A stretch of DNA of 64,000 bases, from the IMG/VR virus record IMGVR_UViG_3300006931_000029, positions 160,955 to 224,954 of that record. One strand, 5' to 3'. The notes beneath the pieces are model-generated. The model searched no databases and had not been told where the DNA came from. It worked only from the letters and a program-made list of their open reading frames with translations. Shown here in pieces: positions 14,386-58,684 of this stretch (its first letter is position 1; each line of letters begins with the position of its first letter). A program made the position numbers and the translations under genes.

Positions 14386-14985
14386 TTAATGTCCACCTGA
14401 CGAGAACGCCTTCACCAAGTCCAGATATGGTTGCGACATCTTGTGAGCTGCCGTCCTCGACGCCCAATCGATGGCCGTGTCAAGACTCATGCTCATGTTT
14501 CGAATAGCGTATGCAGCAGCGACAGCCCCGGTCCGGTCTGTACCGTTCAAGCAGTGAACGTAGATTTTCTTCGCGCTCATCTCATTCAGTCGGCTGATGA
14601 AATCGATCAGCCCTTCGAAGTCGTAGGACTGTGCCGAAGGACCGGTGACGTCCGGCGTCGTACCGCCTTCGATCGGCCACCAACAGAGAAGCCTGTTTTG
14701 ATAAGGCATCGCGTGCATCAAAGCAGGGTCCCACTGAGGATCGAGAAACGGCGGAGCACTACGGGTGAACTTGCAGGCGTAGGTGCGCTCGAGAACCTCT
14801 AGCAGGTCAACCTCGCCGGTGTTATCGGTCAGACAGATTTGAATCAAACCGGATTTCTCAGAACCGATCAACGAATCGAGCTGAGCAAAGTCGACTTCTC
14901 GGTCCTTGTTCAGTGGGAAGTTGCCACGCCAAAGATTGCCATGGATTTCGGAGACGCGAGCCGGATCAAGGATGGGATTGTTCAT
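14386..14985 (-). CDS. Cys-based tyrosine/dual-specificity phosphatase
   Basis: YVHCLNGTDRTG is the CX5R P-loop. N-terminal NLWRG. Confidence 0.85.
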   Translation of the reverse strand: MNNPILDPARVSEIHGNLWRGNFPLNKDREVDFAQLDSLIGSEKSGLIQICLTDNTGEVDLLEVLERTYACKFTRSAPPFLDPQWDPALMHAMPYQNRLLCWWPIEGGTTPDVTGPSAQSYDFEGLIDFISRLNEMSAKKIYVHCLNGTDRTGAVAAAYAIRNMSMSLDTAIDWASRTAAHKMSQPYLDLVKAFSSGGH

Positions 14986-16516: not shown

Positions 16517-16942
16517 TCATTTGGTATGGGTGCCCTCTACTCCGCGGGCTAGACGGTCTTTGGTTCTCTTCTGTAACCACTCGAGTGCAGATTCCAGATG
16601 CTTCAGAGCCTCAGCGTTTTCCACACAGGCGTATTTGCCTGGGATGCTGAAGTTGAACGAGCTGTCCTCGTTGCGGGCGTACTGGAATCCCCGCATGCGA
16701 TCGATGGCAACGGCGATAATCGCTTCGTTCGTAATGCCGTTACGGTCGGCTGGGGTTTGAATCGGTCCGTTTTGGAACCGAAGGTTCACGCCGAACGGTA
16801 CGCGCTCACCAGCAATCGCGCCGGCTTCGCCAATGATGTCGTACTTGTGGTTGGCACCGCCAGGACCTGGCGCGTCAACAGCTGCGATTTCGATGGCTTC
16901 GTTGAGACCGCCGACAATGTGATTTGAGATGATGCGTTTCAT
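16517..16942 (-). CDS. tad1: Tad1-family anti-Thoeris signal-sponge protein
   Basis: GPGGANHKYDI, FQNGP, NGITNEAIIAVAIDRMRGFQ and ENAEALKHLESALEWLQKRTKDRLARGVEGT match the Tad1 pattern (GPGGAxHxY...FQxG...DRLxxFQ...ENAxAL...R..R.V.GT). Confidence 0.85.
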   Translation of the reverse strand: MKRIISNHIVGGLNEAIEIAAVDAPGPGGANHKYDIIGEAGAIAGERVPFGVNLRFQNGPIQTPADRNGITNEAIIAVAIDRMRGFQYARNEDSSFNFSIPGKYACVENAEALKHLESALEWLQKRTKDRLARGVEGTHTK

Positions 16943-17317
16943 TTAGTAGGGTGGATTTTTGGTTAGTTCCTCAGCGATGCAGAACTTTCCCCTTACTCTT
17001 GTCATCAAAACCTCTTTCGCAATGTCCGGTCCGGCGGCGAAGTCGCAGTGAGCCATGCTCTGTGGAAAACCAGTTGCTTCGAAGGCCCACTTAGTCAGGT
17101 CGTCTAGCGTAGCCAACGTCTCAGCTGTCGGTCCCCATTCGTCATGAATGATCCAGACGTCTGGCCTTCCGTACAATCGAACGGTCAGCCTGTTCGCTTG
17201 ATGAATCCAATAGGAGCGGCGTCGCCTGCTGCGTTGGCGATCGACGTTGCGGTACGCTCTGGCAATCTTGTGCAGTAGCCGAGAACGAGTACACGCGTCT
17301 AGTTTTGGTGTCTTCAT
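16943..17317 (-). CDS. Hypothetical protein abutting tad1
   Basis: ATG at 17317 follows the structured leader. Its stop is immediately adjacent to the tad1 ATG. Confidence 0.55.
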   Translation of the reverse strand: MKTPKLDACTRSRLLHKIARAYRNVDRQRSRRRRSYWIHQANRLTVRLYGRPDVWIIHDEWGPTAETLATLDDLTKWAFEATGFPQSMAHCDFAAGPDIAKEVLMTRVRGKFCIAEELTKNPPY

Positions 17318-17400
17318 CGTGAAGCCAATGTGGCCGAGCTTTCGCCCGGCCACAAGGTCCAGCTTCAACTTACGGACACCGGCAAACGCCGGGCCGCTCA
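17318..17400 (-). ncRNA. Candidate structured 5' leader (pseudoknot with an inserted GAAA hairpin)
   Basis: CCGGC/GCCGG hairpin; GTCCG/TGGAC stem whose loop TGAAGC can pair with GCTTCA just before the ATG; 10-bp stem with a GAAA tetraloop. Confidence 0.5.
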
Positions 17401-17417
17401 AGTGATAAGAACAGCGA

Positions 17418-17774
17418 TCAGGCTTTCTTAGCCTTGGGTGGCACCACAGACACAGAGACCAGCATGCCATAGGTCCGATTGTGGCGGGCGAAACGGCGTC
17501 CGGACATAAGTTTGGCAGTCGCGAGGCTGACGAACTCGAACGTCTCCTCTGTGCCGTCTGCGTGTGTGACGACCGTCTTGACGGAACCGAACTCCGCCTT
17601 CAACTGAACGAGAATGGTCTCAACGGCGTTGACGGCACTGGCGAGTTTCTTGTAGCCTTCACCGCCGCCACCTTGATTGCGGTTGTTGCCGCCCTGAAAA
17701 TGGAAGAACCATTCCGGCTTCCAGATTTTGGATTTTGCTTTGCGTACTTTACCGTGGAAGACTTCGATGTGCAT
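17418..17774 (-). CDS. DUF1508 (YegP-like) domain protein
   Basis: EWFFHFQGGNNR...GEGYKKLASAVNAVETI. Confidence 0.6.
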   Translation of the reverse strand: MHIEVFHGKVRKAKSKIWKPEWFFHFQGGNNRNQGGGGEGYKKLASAVNAVETILVQLKAEFGSVKTVVTHADGTEETFEFVSLATAKLMSGRRFARHNRTYGMLVSVSVVPPKAKKA

Positions 17775-17775
17775 G

Positions 17776-18045
17776 TTAGCTTGATGTTGGGATTGTGGTG
17801 CCGCCGGAAGCGATATAGTCGAGCACGTGACCGTAGGTCTTGAACTTCTCTGCGTGCTCTTCAGGAATTTCGCCACCGATTTGGTCTTTGAACTCCTCCT
17901 CGATCGCCATAAGCAACTCGACCATGTCGAGTGAGTCGCAACCAAGATCGTCAAAGGTGGCAGAACCAACCACCTGGTCGGAGTTCAGGTTCAGCTGATT
18001 GACGAAGATTTCTCGGAGCTTAGTGTCGACTTCTTGGCGTTCCAT
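17776..18045 (-). CDS. acpP: Acyl carrier protein
   Basis: FDDLGCDSLDMVELLMAIEEEF...EIPEEHAEKFKT contains the DSL phosphopantetheine site. ATG at 18045 is preferred over 18207. Confidence 0.9.
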   Translation of the reverse strand: MERQEVDTKLREIFVNQLNLNSDQVVGSATFDDLGCDSLDMVELLMAIEEEFKDQIGGEIPEEHAEKFKTYGHVLDYIASGGTTIPTSS

Positions 18046-18720
18046 AGCGGTTTGAGGTTGGATGAATAAGGCGTGGTGAAAAGCTTTGAGTAGAAGAACT
18101 CGGTCGAAGTTGCTGATAGTTGGATCGATTCCCAGTGGAAGCCTGACGTAGTTCAGCGCAAACAGAAGCCACTCGCGTTCCTCGCGTAGGCGTTGCAGCT
18201 CGTCCATTACGGAAGCCTCTTGGAGAGTTCCTTCCGCTTCGTAGTTTCAAAGTCGTCCGGTTCCGCCTCCACAATCTTGGAAAGCTCTGCAAGATCACCG
18301 AGAATTTGTCGGTATTCTGGAAAGATGAAGCTGATGATTAGCACGCGGAAACTGCCAATCTCTGCAGTGCGAGCAAGGATGATGTTGAGGATGGCCTTCT
18401 TCATCTCCTTGTTGCTCATGTGATCCGCGGAGCGCATGTAGTATTCCAGGAGCTGCGGGACGGTTTGGCGTCTGTCTTTCATTTGCGTGATCCTCCTTCA
18501 ACTGTTGATGTGACTATCTTGCCGCCGAGAACCGTGGCGCCCCAACCTCCGTTGAGAGCGCTAGTCGAGATGATGTAGCCGAGGTAGCCGTCAACTCCGA
18601 AGCAGTAGGAAACCTGTTCACCTCGGTACATGAAGACGCCCTTCGGTCCTCCTGCGGCGTGAACGGCGGTTGGCGCGTCGATCCATTGGGCGTTTGGCGA
18701 CGTCGTGTATTCATGCCGAC

Positions 18721-20122: not shown

Positions 20123-20593
20123 TTAATAGCCGCGCAGTTCGTCTCGAACTTCCATCAACAAATGGCCCAACTTATTTTGGCCAACGCCGTCGCACACGCC
20201 CCAAAAGTGGTCGCTCCACCAATTTTTCTCTTCAAGAAATTTCTGCCCCGTGTCCAGCAGCGCTCGCCTCATCTGTTCGTTGGCGTACTTGGCCCGAAGC
20301 ACGTCGCGCATGACGTCGACCTTCCGGGTCTCCCAATCGGCGGTAAGCTTTGCCGTCTGCCCTTTGGTCTTTGCCTGGAATGGTGAGCAGCCCTTGAAGT
20401 AAGACCGAGCATTCGGCCAATGATCTTCCTTTGGCCACTTCGCCGCCTGGTAGGCGTTCTCGCTGGACGGAAAGAACTCGCCCTCGTAGTGGAGGGGAGT
20501 CGGAAACATGTTCGACAACCAGCGATACGGGCCGAAGAACCCTCGAATCACCAGGTCGTTGTGGACGTACTCGAAGTCAGGTGGGATTCTCAC
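20123..20593 (-). CDS. NADAR (YbiA-like) family protein
   Basis: WLSNMF...FPSSENAYQAAK...WETRKVDVM...KY...LLDTG...DHFWG...GQNKLGHLLMEVR. Confidence 0.9.
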   Translation of the reverse strand: MRIPPDFEYVHNDLVIRGFFGPYRWLSNMFPTPLHYEGEFFPSSENAYQAAKWPKEDHWPNARSYFKGCSPFQAKTKGQTAKLTADWETRKVDVMRDVLRAKYANEQMRRALLDTGQKFLEEKNWWSDHFWGVCDGVGQNKLGHLLMEVRDELRGY

Positions 20594-22057: not shown

Positions 22058-22095
22058 GGCTGTGTTTTAACCACTTCAGCTGCGTTTTGTAAACA

Positions 22096-23797: not shown

Positions 23798-24490
23798 CGA
23801 GTCTTTCTTTTCCTGCCGGCGTGATCCAGTAGCCCATGCCGATCTTAGTGGCGTACTTCAAACTTTCCAGATGGACGCACGACTTTGGGTTGAACCTGTA
23901 GGACTTGCGGTTGAGGTTGTGAGCCCGCATGTCCGTCAACGCAAGCAACTGGCGAGTGGTCAATTGAGTGTTCATGGTAGGAGTTTCTCCACTTCATCTA
24001 TCCTACCGGCGTCTACGGCGTCTCGAGGAGAGCAACCTAAGTCAGGATGGACTGTGAACCACCACCTCATCGAAGGAATCCTCTTGCCCAAATCCAACAG
24101 GCGTTGAGCCATACCGTCGTCCATCGGCAGCGTGTTGCTGTTGGTATTCGTAACCACGTTCAGAAGAACTTAACCGCCGACGCCTAGCGGCGCGTTGCTT
24201 GGCACATTTGTCTTCGGCGCAAGCGTCGCAGAGTTTGCCGTGTCCGCCGATTGGCCCATAGTACCGTGCTGGTCGATAGCACCGGGGCTTGGAGCAATAG
24301 ACTTCCGGTTTATCGTGCAAAACTGACAGAACGAAACTGGTATGGGTGGTGGAAGTGGCATGACCAGCATGGATTGGTCGCAGCGACACTGCAGAATCTT
24401 TCCACCATTCAGCAATTTGCGTCCGAAGGGAATCATAAAACACGCACAGCCGATCTAGCTGGTCGACGGGCATTCACCCTCGTTAAGAAC

Positions 24491-24700
24491 ACCTGTCATC
24501 CCAAACCAGATCGGCTATGCGGCCCGTCACGCACGACGGGTTGTGGCCCTTTGGTTGCGCCAGTGTGCAGGGTATAGCGATGAGCTGCAGTCTCGTTCGC
24601 ATCTGCTCCTAAAGCCTGTCCAACCGGGACTTTTATGACTATGACAGGTTAACCCACCCGTCGATTCGAGGATGAACCGGGTTTCGCTAAACTGTGCCAG
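24491..24700 (-). ncRNA. Candidate structured non-coding RNA of about 210 nt
   Basis: Gap in the gene array bounded by GTTCT motifs, with a 9-bp closing helix ACCTGTCAT/ATGACAGGT and several internal hairpins. Confidence 0.45.
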
Positions 24701-38914: not shown

Positions 38915-39788
38915 GCTGGTTGATAGCGTCCTGCCGTATCTGACAGATACGCGATTCAGTGACCTTGAACTCCTCAGCTATCTGCCACAGTCGCATGCCC
39001 TCGAAGTAGTTCATCCGCAAGATGGTTTGCCATTGGTCGGGTAACCGGCTGATGTGGGTTTTCAGCAAGCCAACCAGCTCTGCTTCCTGCATTGAGTCTC
39101 TTGCAAGAACGTCCTGGGTGTCTGCCAGAGACTCGTGAAGAGATACGCCGTGTTCCTCACTTTCGCTGATGAAATCGATAGACGTGAACGTTTGAGGACG
39201 GGCTTCTTCGACCATTTTTCTGTACTCGGTTGGCGTCAAGTTCATCTCGGCCATGATCTCGGTCGCCGTCGGGTCTCGTTGCAGTTTTTGCGTCAACGTT
39301 GCGACAACTTCTTTTAGAACCCGGTTTCTAGCTCGAGCTCGACGAGGAACCCAATCCATCCTCCTAAGCTCGTCTAGGATAGCTCCTCGAATTCTCATGG
39401 AAGCGTACCCTTTGAACGAAGAAGCTCTGGCAGCGTCGTACTTCTTCGCTGCCGCCATCAACCCGGTTATTCCTACGCTGTGCAGGTCGTCTGCGTCGAT
39501 GTGTGCAGGAAGATTTAGTTTGATCCGGTCCACGACCTGTCGGACGAGGTACATGTGTTGCACAAGAAAATCTCCGCTAGTTGCCTCCGCGGTTACTTCT
39601 TGCCTCTTCCTCTTAGGTTTAACGATCAGCTCGTGAGGAGCTTGGTTCACCTGCTCCCTAGGAACGACCGGTTGAAAAATGTCAAGGCGGTGCCGAGGCG
39701 CCACCATGATCGGTGGACCGTCGACGACAACTTGAATAATCTCGAAAGCGTCGTCCTCGACTGTGAGTAGGACGAGCGTTGAGTTCAC
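38880..39788 (-). CDS. RNA polymerase sigma factor, FliA/WhiG family
   Basis: DDLHSVGITGL..AAKKYD...FKGYASMRIRGAILDELRRMDWVPR (region 2), region 3, and IAEEFKVTESRICQI (region 4). Confidence 0.9.
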   Translation of the reverse strand: MNSTLVLLTVEDDAFEIIQVVVDGPPIMVAPRHRLDIFQPVVPREQVNQAPHELIVKPKRKRQEVTAEATSGDFLVQHMYLVRQVVDRIKLNLPAHIDADDLHSVGITGLMAAAKKYDAARASSFKGYASMRIRGAILDELRRMDWVPRRARARNRVLKEVVATLTQKLQRDPTATEIMAEMNLTPTEYRKMVEEARPQTFTSIDFISESEEHGVSLHESLADTQDVLARDSMQEAELVGLLKTHISRLPDQWQTILRMNYFEGMRLWQIAEEFKVTESRICQIRQDAINQLKKWVVWRKDR

Positions 39789-47643: not shown

Positions 47644-47650
47644 TTAGACC

Positions 47651-47685
47651 ACCATACCGTTGGGACGGATTTTGTAAACAAAAAT
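47651..47685 (-). promoter_or_regulatory. Sigma70-like early promoter
   Basis: TTTACA-N16-TATGGT-N7-GTG(47643). Confidence 0.7.
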
Positions 47686-49217
47686 TTATGGCTTATGCCC
47701 AAAAGACACCCCTGTCGATCAAGTTGTCGATGTCGACTCCATGGGAGTAACCCTTCTGACTAATCCAGCAACGATGGCGCGCGTCTTCTGTAGGAAATCC
47801 CCATGGCCATTCGTTCGCGATCGACGTGAGCGTAATCAACTCCTGATCCTGTCCGTAAAGGCGGTGAAGAGTGTAGCACCACATCACGGCGTCGCCCGGC
47901 CCTTTGCAGAGATTTAACACGTAAAAGAAAACCTCAATGGTCAACTGCGTAGACTCGTGCATTCTACCTGCGAAGACTTTGAAACCAAAGCCTTCAGAGA
48001 CTTTAGCAATGACGGAGGCGTGACGATTGTTCGCTAGATTAGTACGATCAAACGGCGTCAACTTGCCTTCTTTTTCATCTTCGCTCTCGGCGGCCAAAAG
48101 CTGCAGAAACATCAAGCTCTGGTCCGGGGTCATCGGCTCGATGTCCTCCTTAGCTCGAAAGTCGAGCAACGATTTCAAGACGATCTTCTCGCCTGTTTTC
48201 GGACTGATAGTGATGTCTGGTTTGTCGCTCATTTGATGTTGAGAAGTTTCTTGGCTGCTGCTTCGACCTGAGGATCAAGCCAGTCCTTTTTAGAAGGAAG
48301 ATCGGAGATGATCTGGCGCAAAAGGCTCTCCGCTAGATTCTCACCGTTCAAGGGTTGACGACCGACCACGGCGTTGTTTAGAATCGTTGTTGCGTCGAGA
48401 GCCGTTGAATCCATCGCCATTTGAAGCTGCTCAAAGCTTCCGCAGTCCTTACGAGCGTCAAAGTTATCGGGCAAGATGGCGATCGCCTGCACCTCGATGT
48501 AGGTCTTTCCCTTGAGCGGGCCTTTAGTGACGTGACCGCGGTAATTTACCCGGTCCCATGTCCATCTAATTATTGCCGGAAGATTGGCGGGCTTTTCTGG
48601 AAGATCGATTCTCTTCGACGACATAGTAGGCAGCGGTTGAAGCCAGGACTTGGCCAGTTGTGAGAAGGAAAGCTAGAAGGAGTTTGAACCAGACGCTAAT
48701 CGACTGACCGAATGGTAACATCAACGTCAGGATGTAGACCGCGCCTACGTTGAACAGAAAGGCGAAGGCGGTGAGCGTGGTTGAGATAGGGGGCGACTTC
48801 AAGGTTTGGTTTTCTTCCGATGATCGTAGACGATGTGCTTCTGTTCTTCGGCATGCATGCGAGGAGCGAAGACGTGGCACTTCCCATCGTCTAGCAAGAA
48901 CTCACGGTGGATCGTGTCGGCAGGAAGATTGGCGTCAGGCTTGGACATTTCAACAACGGCTGTTTCTGGTTTTTGAACCAATTCGCCTTTCCACATTCTT
49001 CCGCTTACCTTGGGAACGACCGGAGCTTCGTCTCGCTGTTGTCGTTTGCCGGCTTTCGAGACATAGGTCTTGAGCAGGATTTCCAAACTACCTGCTTTCT
49101 CGATACGACCTCGAATGTACTCAGGATCGGAATAAACGACCTCGTCTCCAGTGACTGAACACTTCAGCGTGAGAGGGCAGGGAAAGCCAAGAGTCGGGTT
49201 GATCGGGTTGATGCCGC

Positions 49218-49433: not shown

Positions 49434-49439
49434 GAAGCC

Positions 49440-49477
49440 ATCCTACACTTTGGTTGGAATTTGTAAACAAAAAAGTG
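49440..49477 (-). promoter_or_regulatory. Sigma70-like early promoter
   Basis: TTTACA-N16-TAGGAT-N6-ATG(49433). Confidence 0.7.
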
Positions 49478-49496
49478 TTGGCCTATTTCAGCCAAA

Positions 49497-54567: not shown

Positions 54568-54577
54568 GGACGGGTTT

Positions 54578-54612
54578 AGGCTAGCGTTGTCCTTGAGTTT
54601 GTAAACAAAAAT
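54578..54612 (-). promoter_or_regulatory. Sigma70-like early promoter heading the Toprim-to-PurA-like operon
   Basis: TTTACA-N16-TAGCCT-N10-ATG(54567). Confidence 0.7.
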
Positions 54613-54615
54613 AAA

Positions 54616-55967: not shown

Positions 55968-56369
55968 TGTAGTCAAGAACTAGTCAGACCCCAGGATTCG
56001 TTATCTTGGGCGGCGTGATTTCGTTCAATTTGTTGAGAATTTTCCTGATAGCCAGTTGAATGCCCATTCCACGCTGGGCTTTGTCGAGTTCGAGAAACTG
56101 AGATTGCTCAGCTATCTTGGCCAGCGTGTCTAACTCTCGCCACGTGAGCTGGTTTTCGTTGTCCGGAAAAACACTGGACGCATTCACTATTCCGTAGAGA
56201 AATCCTCCAACTTGAGACGCGCGTTGACACACGCCGTCATAGTGTTTCTGCGAGCACTCAACTAGCAACTCAATCTCGTCAGGAGAAAAGGTAACCCACG
56301 CTTTTGGTTGAAAAGTGACAGACAAGAGATTCATTTCGGTGCAGGCCTCCTAGTCGGAGGGCTGTAGCG

Positions 56370-56401
56370 AAACCCGGCGAGGCCACACGCCCCGCCGGAT
56401 T
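56370..56401 (-). terminator. GC-rich hairpin terminator
   Basis: ATCCGGCGGGGC-GTGTG-GCCTCGCCGGGT-TT after the stop at 56412. The U-tract is short. Confidence 0.6.
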
Positions 56402-56411
56402 CCATGGCTGT

Positions 56412-58593: not shown

Positions 58594-58632
58594 ATTCAAC
58601 CCACTTTGTTCTGAAATGTAAACAAAAAAGTG
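58594..58632 (-). promoter_or_regulatory. Early promoter cassette
   Basis: TTTACA-N17-TTGAAT-N7-ATG(58586). Confidence 0.75.
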
Positions 58633-58684
58633 TAGGTAATTTTAGGTGTCTTTCGGCTCAGCTGGAAGTAGGTTCTTCTAGACT

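What the first reader, a model, noticed from the sequence alone, without database searches (positions are those of the whole stretch)
17315..17412. Pseudoknotted 5' leader in front of the operon that contains Tad1 (riboswitch-like)
Seen on the minus strand: a GTTCT motif (17408-17412), a CCGGC-GTTT-GCCGG hairpin, and a GTCCG/TGGAC stem with loop TAAGTTGAAGC. These are followed by a 10-bp GTGGCCGGGC-GAAA-GCTCGGCCAC hairpin and then GCTTCA (17320-17325), which is complementary to the loop and ends 2 nt before the ATG at 17317. Most genes behind this motif appear leaderless, so an 85-nt folded leader stands out. Established: a pseudoknot with an inserted hairpin is the topology of fluoride and preQ1-II riboswitches, but their conserved nucleotides are absent here. 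Inference (speculative): a translational switch controlling the gene coupled to tad1, possibly responding to a protein or to an immune-signal nucleotide.
Basis: partly seen in the sequence, partly recalled or inferred. Interest (0 to 1): 0.7.

Follow-up and report, generated by a model that had tools for sequence, protein, structure and literature searches.

The report
Conserved two-hairpin leader before Tad1 operon
In front of a two-gene unit that ends in the anti-immunity gene tad1, this soil jumbo phage has a real, conserved, non-coding folded RNA leader, but it is two ordinary hairpins abutting the start codon rather than a pseudoknotted riboswitch, and what controls it is still unknown.

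Summary
The sequence features are all present as described, on the minus strand. The window belongs to a 225-kb jumbo phage with direct terminal repeats. The gene after next is a genuine Tad1 homolog.

Two relatives, contigs L003 and L025, carry the same leader. Remote homologs of the downstream protein start at ATG 17317. In L025 all three leader frames contain stop codons. The leader is therefore non-coding.

Comparison across the three copies supports a nested fold and not a pseudoknot.
- H1 (17395-17375) is an 8-bp hairpin whose sequence changes with compensatory pairs.
- The core (17367-17320) is a 48-nt bipartite hairpin: a 9-bp basal stem, an ACCU bulge, an 11-bp upper stem and a GNRA loop.
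- Window and L025 match at 48 of 48 core positions, while their flanking genes are 58-73% identical.
- The "loop-GCTTCA" pairing is real, but it is the basal stem of the long hairpin.

Unpaired bases vary more than the stems, and Rfam gives no hit, so a small-molecule aptamer is unlikely.

My best guess is a protein-recognised translational operator or processing signal. An alternative fold that occludes the start codon lies 1-4 kcal/mol above the long hairpin. Interest is moderate.

The parts
17418..17420 (-). Stop codon (TGA) of the upstream 118-aa gene (17421-17774).
   Evidence: The same ...AAGAAAGCC-TGA ending occurs in L003 and L025.
17407..17412 (-). GTTCTT motif, inferred to be a -10-like promoter element. 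It is invariant in all three leader copies.
   Evidence: Genome-wide enrichment 11-17 nt before first ATGs. The same spacing occurs in relative L022. TGA..GTTCTT matches at 13 of 13 positions between window and L025. The phage encodes a sigma-70 family protein. Promoter function is inferred.
17399..17401 (-). Conserved TTG 11 nt after the G of GTTCT. This is the predicted 5' end region of the transcript and is not a conserved start codon.
   Evidence: An in-frame extension from here is excluded by the stops in L025 and by the homolog N-termini.
17375..17395 (-). Hairpin H1: 8 bp with one bulged U and loop GUUU. Its structure is conserved but its sequence is not.
   Evidence: 8 of 8 pairs are kept in all three sequences, with 2 compensatory changes (C-G to U-A, G-C to A-U) and 2 one-sided changes. 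Folded alone it gives -11.8 kcal/mol.
17368..17374 (-). Unpaired 7-nt linker between H1 and the core hairpin. It is poorly conserved.
   Evidence: Three of 7 positions are identical between window and L025.
17320..17367 (-). Core bipartite hairpin. Basal stem 17367-17359 pairs with 17328-17320 (9 bp, 3 G.U). Bulge ACCU lies at 17358-17355. Upper stem 17354-17344 pairs with 17339-17329 (11 bp, 1 G.U). The GNRA loop lies at 17343-17340.
   Evidence: Folded alone it gives -30.6 kcal/mol, and basal-pair probabilities are 0.62-1.0. Window and L025 match at 48 of 48 positions plus one inserted T. Window and L003 match at 45 of 48, with changes only in the bulge and at loop position 2. All 4 non-Watson-Crick pairs are G.U on the sense strand.
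17312..17317 (-). Start codon ATG plus AAG. The bases UGAAG repeat the 5' arm of the basal stem and can pair with the 3' arm GCUUCA in an alternative, start-occluding fold.
   Evidence: fold B lies 1.1-3.7 kcal/mol above fold A in the 9- and 15-nt extension constructs of all three sequences, and up to 5.9 in the L003 30-nt construct; with 60 nt of coding sequence added, the start codon is mostly paired in L003 and L025.
16943..17317 (-). ORF124, an arginine-rich helical protein of unknown function and the first gene behind the leader. Its stop is immediately followed by the tad1 ATG (TAAATG).
   Evidence: No Pfam, NCBIfam, PDB or Atlas match.
16517..16942 (-). Tad1 homolog (Acb2/Tad1 hairpin family).
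   Evidence: PDB Tad1 chains at E 5.6e-12. PF24729 on 300+ homologs.

Best explanation
Shown: the stretch 17320-17412 (minus strand) is a non-coding, evolutionarily conserved leader RNA. It stands in front of a small operon whose first two genes are ORF124 and tad1. It folds into two nested hairpins. H1 is kept as a structure only. The second is a 48-nt bipartite hairpin with a GNRA loop that ends 2-5 nt before the AUG, and its sequence is frozen on both arms.

Inferred: transcription starts about 7 nt after the GTTCTT element. In this phage that element normally sits 7-12 nt before start codons, giving near-leaderless mRNAs.

Inferred mechanism: the long hairpin is a cis-regulatory operator read by a sequence-specific factor, most likely a protein. 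The operon's own arginine-rich first product is a candidate. Binding or cleavage would shift the balance between two nearly isoenergetic folds. In fold A the 3' arm GCUUCA pairs with the upstream UGAAGC and the AUG is free. In fold B the 3' arm pairs with the UGAAG of AUG-AAG and the start codon is occluded. This would set translation of ORF124 and, through the TAAATG junction, of Tad1.
For: Non-coding status:
- Remote homologs P0123, P0124 and P0126 begin within 0-3 residues of ATG 17317.
- The L025 leader has stops in all three frames, even if its extra T is removed.

Conservation:
- Window and L025 match at 48 of 48 core positions. The flanking genes are 73% and 58% identical, and third codon positions are 42-50% identical. 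The probability under the flank rate is about 3e-6.

Structure:
- All 28 nested pairs are kept in all three sequences, with compensatory changes in H1.
- The nested fold scores -43.4 kcal/mol.
- The element ranks third of 44,976 genome windows by MFE.
- All four non-Watson-Crick pairs are G.U on the sense strand. This points to sense-strand RNA and not to a DNA palindrome (sequence).

Switch:
- Fold B lies 1.1-3.7 kcal/mol above fold A in the short constructs of all three copies.
- Only the leader-bearing clade starts with AUG-AAG-AC.

Promoter inference.

Precedent: structured 5' UTR hairpins of acr-aca operons are bound by Aca2 and Aca1, and Aca2 binding represses translation (PMC13551039).
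Against: - Only three independent sequences exist, and the core shows no variation, so its pairing has no covariation support.
- No transcript data were found, so the 5' end is inferred.
- No binding factor has been identified.
- ORF124 homologs sit next to Tad1 without any leader in L022 and its relatives. If ORF124 is the binder, that cannot be its only role.
- The AAG second codon could simply encode a common lysine.
- The identity profile between window and L003 shows other 95-100% patches inside genes. The conservation argument therefore rests mainly on L025.
Confidence: 0.45

Rival explanations
1. The hairpin is an RNase III-type processing or mRNA-stability element. The 20-bp coaxial hairpin would be cut by a double-strand-specific nuclease, or would protect the mRNA end. 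This would uncouple the ORF124-tad1 message from the upstream genes and set its stability and translation, as at the T7 intergenic R sites or the lambda N leader (own knowledge).
For: - About two helical turns of duplex with a bulge lie in an intergenic position directly before an AUG.
- Strong intergenic hairpins recur in this genome.
- H1 near the predicted 5' end behaves as a structure-only element, as a 5' stabiliser would.
Against: - RNase III recognition is mostly structural, so stems should drift with compensation, as H1 does. Instead all 40 stem bases of the core are frozen.
- The host and its RNases are unknown.
- No cleavage data exist.
Confidence: 0.2
2. The element acts on transcription. 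It could be a U-tract-less terminator or attenuator for the upstream operon, or a put-like RNA (as in HK022) that modifies RNA polymerase just after the promoter (own knowledge).
For: - Two stem-loops lie immediately downstream of a putative promoter and immediately after a stop codon.
- Other GC-rich hairpins without T runs follow genes in this phage.
Against: - There is no T run after either hairpin, whereas this phage's clear terminators have long T runs.
- The hairpins lie downstream of the conserved GTTCTT, not upstream of it.
- No strong terminator was seen further down the operon that would need to be overridden.
Confidence: 0.1
3. One reading: an H-type pseudoknot with an inserted hairpin that forms a ligand-sensing riboswitch, possibly for an immune-signal nucleotide.
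For: - The GTCCG/TGGAC stem and the loop-GCTTCA complementarity exist in the window and in L003.
- The X/X'/X arrangement allows a translational switch.
- The element sits in front of a gene pair that includes a sponge for signalling nucleotides.
Against: - Two of five H2 pairs are broken in L025.
- H2 pairs have probability 0 in the pseudoknot-free ensemble, and the nested fold is about 8 kcal/mol better before any knot penalty.
- The H2 5' strand is used by the covariation-supported extension of H1.
- No Rfam family reaches threshold. The best match has E 2.1.
- The unpaired linker, bulge and loop vary while the stems are invariant.
- There is no multi-helix junction that could form a binding pocket.
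Confidence: 0.05
4. The stretch is translated as an N-terminal extension of ORF124, starting at TTG 17401 or at ATG 17470. The hairpins would then be incidental or would act within a coding region.
For: - The frame is open in the window and in L003.
- A TTG or GTG lies 11 nt after GTTCT in both.
- The 3-nt insertion in L003 keeps the frame.
- A gene caller annotated the extended form as P0001.
Against: - In L025 every frame of the leader has a stop.
- Three of the four more distant homologs of the protein start within 0-3 residues of the ATG, and P0125 carries an unrelated 13-residue extension.
- Synonymous sites are frozen in the stretch, unlike in the neighbouring genes.
Confidence: 0.03
5. 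The element has no dedicated function. The identity would reflect a recent recombination patch shared among mosaic phages.
For: The identity profile between window and L003 is patchy, with other 95-100% stretches.
Against: - Two separate invariant patches (TGA-GTTCTT and the core) flank a diverged H1 that keeps its pairing by compensation.
- The MFE rank is extreme.
- The G.U pattern is strand-specific.
- The flanks in L025 are near saturation at silent sites.
Confidence: 0.05

Closest known systems
Structured 5' UTR RNA motifs of phage acr-aca operons, bound by Aca2 and Aca1
   Same: Both are conserved hairpins in the leader of a phage counter-defence operon. Both lie between the promoter and the first start codon. 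In both, the stem sequence and not only the fold is conserved, which fits readout by a protein. For Aca2 the result is translational repression (PMC13551039).
   Different: No HTH regulator has been identified here. ORF124 has no Pfam, NCBIfam or PDB match. No matching inverted repeat was found in the promoter DNA. Binding has not been tested. The operon carries Tad1, not an anti-CRISPR. Only three sequences are known.
Lambda N leader: nutL boxB hairpin plus an RNase III-sensitive hairpin before the N start codon (own knowledge)
   Same: The order is the same: promoter, then a small hairpin, then a large hairpin abutting the start of a small arginine-rich protein at the head of an early operon. 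A GNRA-type loop is present. In lambda, translation is set by protein binding and RNase III cleavage.
   Different: There is no boxA or boxB sequence similarity. The GNRA loop caps a 20-bp helix and not a 5-bp one. ORF124 shows no detectable similarity to N. An antitermination function was not tested.
T7-type intergenic RNase III processing sites (own knowledge)
   Same: Both are bipartite hairpins of about 20 bp with an internal interruption, lying between genes of a phage transcript.
   Different: The interruption here is a one-sided 4-nt bulge. The whole stem sequence is frozen. The site lies downstream of a putative promoter. No cleavage evidence exists.
   Same: The only shared feature is complementarity between an upstream segment and a segment next to the start codon.
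   Different: There is no Rfam match. The pseudoknot stem is not conserved. The conserved nucleotides of those families are absent. The conservation pattern is the reverse of an aptamer.

Membership tests
Any Rfam family, including the fluoride, preQ1-II and other riboswitches, phage cis-regulatory RNAs, ribozymes and CRISPR direct repeats | The covariance-model score reaches the family's gathering threshold. | tested here: not met
   There were 0 hits in the whole window at gathering thresholds. In the permissive scan of 17250-17480 the best match was CC3552 at 15.4 bits (threshold 50, E 2.1). All four matches had E above 2.
   Two of five pairs are broken in L025. Pair probability is 0 in the pseudoknot-free ensemble. 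The 5' strand is used by the covariation-supported H1 extension.
Riboswitch aptamer in general | Unpaired junction and loop nucleotides are conserved while stems covary, and binding to a ligand is shown. | tested here: not met
   The pattern is the reverse. The linker matches at 3 of 7 positions. The bulge and loop position 2 vary. All 20 core base pairs are invariant. Ligand binding cannot be tested with these tools.
Cis-regulatory 5' leader RNA | The element is non-coding, lies on the sense strand between a promoter and a start codon, and its structure is conserved in homologous loci. | tested here: met
   Non-coding status. Structure kept in three loci with compensatory changes in H1. The G.U pairs are sense-strand specific. 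The promoter and transcription start are only inferred.
Aca-type 5' UTR operator | An operon-encoded regulator binds the RNA hairpin, and a related inverted repeat lies in the promoter DNA. | not testable with these tools
   The complex prediction for ORF124 plus the hairpin was not folded by the tool. No HTH domain was found in neighbouring proteins. No second copy of the repeat exists in the genome.
Intrinsic (Rho-independent) terminator | A GC-rich hairpin is followed directly by a run of U. | tested here: not met
   The tails are GTCCGTAAG after H1 and CGATGAAG after the core. The consensus terminator scan reports nothing at 17320-17395. True terminators in this genome have 9-11 T.
RNase III processing site | About 20 bp of duplex are cleaved by RNase III. 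| tested here: inconclusive
   The duplex length is met, with 9 + 11 bp stacked. Cleavage cannot be tested here and the host is unknown.
Tad1 (the neighbouring gene named in the finding) | Sequence homology to structurally solved Tad1 proteins and to the Acb2/Tad1 hairpin domain. | tested here: met
   PDB 8kbh, 8kbg and 7uav match at E 5.6e-12 over residues 20-141. PF24729 is on the homologs. Sponge activity was not tested.

The most novel reading that the evidence does not exclude
The 48-nt frozen hairpin with its start-codon-occluding alternative could be a previously undescribed class of switch RNA. It would time or dose production of the Tad1 sponge and its conserved partner ORF124 in jumbo phages. 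It might be read by ORF124 itself as an autoregulatory, arginine-rich RNA binder, analogous to but unrelated to Aca proteins. It might instead be read by a host or immune-derived factor.
Probability: 0.12. Interest if true: 0.7.

Novelty: new member of a known kind. Interest (0 to 1): 0.4.

Why it matters
Regulation of phage counter-defence genes is known mainly for anti-CRISPR operons, where Aca proteins act on DNA and on 5' UTR hairpins. How sponges such as Tad1 are timed or dosed is largely unexplored.

This leader is a concrete, small and testable candidate for such control in an uncultured jumbo-phage clade. It also flags ORF124 as a conserved partner of Tad1.

The work also exposes this phage's transcription grammar: GTTCT placed 7-12 nt before start codons, near-leaderless genes and a phage-encoded sigma factor. 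That grammar helps annotate related soil phages.

The practical value is limited by having only three sequences, no host and no RNA data.

Tried and rejected
- **Rfam.** The scan at gathering thresholds over the window and the permissive scan of the locus found nothing usable.
- **Collection scans for further copies.**
  - The loop/arm pattern found 0 stretches in IMG/VR.
  - In metagenome contigs it found 6 stretches, of which only the own genome and the L003 contig are real.
  - In GTDB genomes it found 6 stretches, all chance.
  - The upper-hairpin pattern found 0 in IMG/VR.
- **Covariance model R1.** It found one copy in the own genome and none in other Tad1 loci or in L022. The full records behind L022, L019 and L017 are not held, so they were not searched.
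- **GenBank phages.** blastn found no match.
- **Close Tad1 homologs.** P0004, P0005, P0007 and P0008 have unrelated upstream genes and no leader.
- **Upstream-gene homologs.** They yielded only the own genome and L003-type sequences.
- **Sequencing runs.**
  - All holders look like DNA metagenomes.
  - Their contigs showed variants only outside the element (17182, 17192, 17201, 17264).
  - They gave no transcript ends.
  - The second read-laying run laid nothing.
- **Complex prediction.** Complex prediction for ORF124 plus the hairpin RNA was not folded by the tool. It counts as no evidence either way.
- **ORF124 function.** Pfam, PHROGs, NCBIfam, PDB sequence search, Foldseek against the PDB and the ESM Atlas gave nothing. 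The structural model is confident only for the N-terminal helical hairpin.
- **Conservation argument from L003 alone.** I rejected it as too weak because other 95-100% identity patches exist.
- **Other readings considered and rejected.**
  - N-terminal extension: rejected on the evidence.
  - dsDNA palindromic operator: all four imperfect pairs are G.U on the sense strand.
  - CRISPR-repeat mimic, group II intron domain V and N4-type DNA hairpin promoter: no supporting feature was found.

Full report
**Context**

The window is bases 160955-224954 of a 224,954-bp IMG/VR virus record with direct terminal repeats. It is a jumbo phage found in rhizosphere and soil metagenomes. The genes around the finding run on the minus strand.

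In transcription order the local genes are:
- an ACP-like gene at 17776-18207 (PF00550);
- a 118-aa gene at 17421-17774 with stop TGA at 17420-17418;
- the 100-nt gap that holds the finding;
- a 124-aa ORF at 16943-17317, called ORF124 here;
- a 141-aa gene at 16517-16942 whose ATG directly follows the TAA of ORF124.

The 141-aa gene is a genuine Tad1 homolog. It matches solved Tad1 chains at E 5.6e-12, and its 300+ homologs carry PF24729.

**Check of the observation**

The 126-nt stretch folds to -54.7 kcal/mol with a z-score of -4.4 against dinucleotide shuffles.

I scanned the whole genome in 80-nt windows on both strands. There were 44,976 windows, with a mean of -19.9 and a standard deviation of 5.0 kcal/mol. 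The element ranks third at -45.1.

- GTTCT precedes the first ATG of ORFs of at least 50 aa by 11-17 nt in 36 cases. Thirteen control pentamers give 3-15 cases (listing).
- The related jumbo-phage contig L022 shows GTTCT-N7-start at three of 14 genes.
- Only about one gene in seven has the motif. That frequency suits a promoter and not a ribosome-binding site.
- The phage encodes a sigma-70 family protein. No T7-like or multisubunit polymerase was found.

I therefore read GTTCTT as a -10-like element. It would place the 5' end near 17400 and give a leader of about 84 nt where 0-5 nt is usual. This step is inferred, because no RNA data could be found.

**Is the stretch translated?**

The frame is open in the window, and a TTG lies 11 nt after GTTCT. 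The one close homolog, P0001 on contig L003, was annotated from a GTG at the same distance.

Three observations argue against translation.
- An exhaustive phmmer search found more distant homologs.
  - P0124 begins MKTPKLD, exactly at the position of ATG 17317.
  - P0123 and P0126 begin within three residues of it.
  - P0125 has an unrelated 13-residue extension.
- The contig carrying P0124, L025, contains a third copy of the leader. All three of its frames hold a stop between GTTCTT and the ATG. This stays true if its one extra T is treated as an error.
- Silent sites are frozen in the stretch but near saturation in the adjacent genes.

The leader is non-coding.

**Which fold?**

I aligned the three copies (A3). 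A nested model keeps 28 of 28 pairs in every sequence.

H1 (17395-17375) has 8 bp and one bulged U. Its sequence differs in L025, but the pairing is kept by two compensatory changes and two one-sided changes.

The core (17367-17320) has four parts:
- a 9-bp basal stem, UGAAGCUGG with UUGGCUUCA;
- a 4-nt bulge;
- an 11-bp upper stem;
- a GNRA loop (GAAA, or GCAA in L003).

Its pair probability is 0 in the pseudoknot-free ensemble. Its GTC bases are consumed by the supported H1 extension.

The nested fold scores -43.4 kcal/mol. With three sequences the shuffle control is not significant (62 of 500 shuffles). The covariation evidence is suggestive for H1 and absent for the core.

**Conservation pattern (window against L025)**

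| Segment | Identity |
|---|---|
| Upstream gene | 73% |
| ORF124 | 58% |
| Third codon positions | 42-50% |
| Core hairpin | 48 of 48, plus one inserted T |
| TGA..GTTCTT | 13 of 13 |
| Spacer plus H1 | 17 of 30 |
| Linker | 3 of 7 |

The probability of the core identity under the flank rate is about 3e-6.

L003 changes only the H1 loop, two bulge bases and loop position 2. It also inserts three bases before the ATG. On its own the L003 comparison would be weak, because other 95-100% identity patches exist between those two genomes.

Two features shape the interpretation.
- Both stems of the core are invariant while unpaired bases vary. This is the reverse of a small-molecule aptamer and suits readout of a helix by a macromolecule.
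- All four non-Watson-Crick pairs are G.U on the sense strand. For random mismatches this has a chance of roughly (1/6)^4. It points to sense-strand RNA and not to a DNA palindrome or an antisense RNA.

**Distribution**

A covariance model of the element finds one copy in the own genome. It finds none in the other Tad1 loci or in the L022 locus. Pattern scans of the viral, metagenome and GTDB collections add nothing beyond L003.

In the L022 lineage the ORF124 homolog overlaps its upstream gene and has no leader. Close Tad1 homologs elsewhere have unrelated neighbours. The promoter-plus-leader cassette is therefore specific to a narrow clade.

**Mechanism**

The 3' arm GCUUCA is complementary to the 5' arm UGAAGC and also to the UGAAG of AUG-AAG. 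In short constructs the start-occluding fold B lies only 1.1-3.7 kcal/mol above fold A in all three sequences. With 60 nt of coding sequence added, the start codon is predicted to be mostly paired in L003 and L025.

I propose a protein-recognised operator that biases this equilibrium. It would set translation of ORF124 and, through the TAAATG junction, of Tad1. The closest documented precedent is the 5' UTR hairpins of acr-aca operons that Aca2 and Aca1 bind (PMC13551039).

ORF124 is a candidate reader for two reasons.
- It is arginine-rich (RSRLLHKIARAYRNVDRQRSRRRRSYW) and has a confidently predicted N-terminal helical hairpin.
- It is paired with Tad1 in at least four lineages.

However, ORF124 has no recognisable family, and it also occurs without the leader. 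The complex-prediction tool did not fold the protein-RNA pair.

An RNase III-type processing or stability role is the main rival. Transcriptional roles, the pseudoknot riboswitch, a coding extension and a neutral recombination patch are less likely, for the reasons given under each rival.

**Verdict**

This is a real, non-coding, conserved and strongly folded leader in front of ORF124-tad1. Its topology is two nested hairpins and not a pseudoknot. It is unlikely to be a riboswitch. Its function is unproven and is most plausibly a protein-read translational operator. It is a new, Rfam-absent member of a known kind, of moderate interest, and is limited by three sequences and no RNA data.

Noticed in passing
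whole genome; e.g. window 19360, 20080, 20605, 24490, 55980, 58672 (minus or plus strand); L022:571, 1358, 4801: GTTCT(T), often preceded by C, lies 11-17 nt before the first ATG of about 36-50 genes. Upstream regions show no Shine-Dalgarno-like sequence. The same GTTCT-N7-start spacing occurs in a related 222-kb phage contig. This suggests a clade-specific -10-like promoter with near-leaderless mRNAs.
   Followed up: partly
genome-wide; e.g. window 22058-22095, 47644-47692, 49434-49496, 54568-54615, 58596-58684: A second motif, TTTTTGTTTACA(A/T), has 43 TGTTTACA copies. It often follows T-run terminators directly and sometimes lies 9-15 nt upstream of GTTCT. It is possibly a second promoter class or a -35-like element.
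   Followed up: no
window 39351-39560 (minus), inside a 396-aa frame: A phage-encoded sigma-70 family protein (PF04542, E 4.8e-13). No T7-like polymerase or RNA polymerase beta-subunit homolog was detected in the genome.
   Followed up: partly
window 24441-24520 (minus): This is the most stable 80-nt fold in the genome (-45.9 kcal/mol). A 17-bp long-range helix encloses a GTTCTT motif and the ATG of the next gene. Read-through transcripts would therefore have that start codon enclosed in a hairpin.
   Followed up: no
window 56331-56410 (minus); genome 51715-51794 (minus); genome 69325-69404 (minus): Other very strong intergenic hairpins without T runs lie directly before start codons. They rank 5th, 2nd and 4th by MFE. 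Structured intergenic RNAs recur in this phage.
   Followed up: no
window 16943-17317 with 16517-16942; L003:1175-2091; L022:3001-3794; contig of P0125: ORF124-family proteins sit immediately upstream of Tad1 homologs, with touching or overlapping stop and start, in at least four lineages. They are arginine-rich at the N-terminus, carry a conserved C-terminal AEELTKNPPY, and match no known family. They may be a functional partner of Tad1.
   Followed up: partly
window 16972-17031 (minus); L003:1624; L022:3324: The 3' end of ORF124 is 100% identical at the DNA level between window and L003 over 60 nt. It holds a GTTCT 43-46 nt before the tad1 ATG, and this is also present in L022. It could be an internal promoter for tad1 or simply the conserved G(K/R)F codons.
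   Followed up: no
window 14386-14985 (minus): A dual-specificity phosphatase gene (PF00782, E 1.3e-9) is absent from the otherwise syntenic relative L003, so it is an indel.
   Followed up: no
window 20123-20593 (minus); window 17776-18207 (minus): A NADAR-domain protein (PF08719, E 8.9e-20) and an ACP-like protein (PF00550) lie in the same gene block as Tad1. The region looks like an accessory or counter-defence neighbourhood.
   Followed up: no
genome about 54.8-62.7 kb (outside the window): The intergenic gaps there look like a large cluster of tRNA genes, judged from sequences such as GGTTCGAATCC. This was seen only in the intergenic listing, and the tRNA finder was not run.
   Followed up: no
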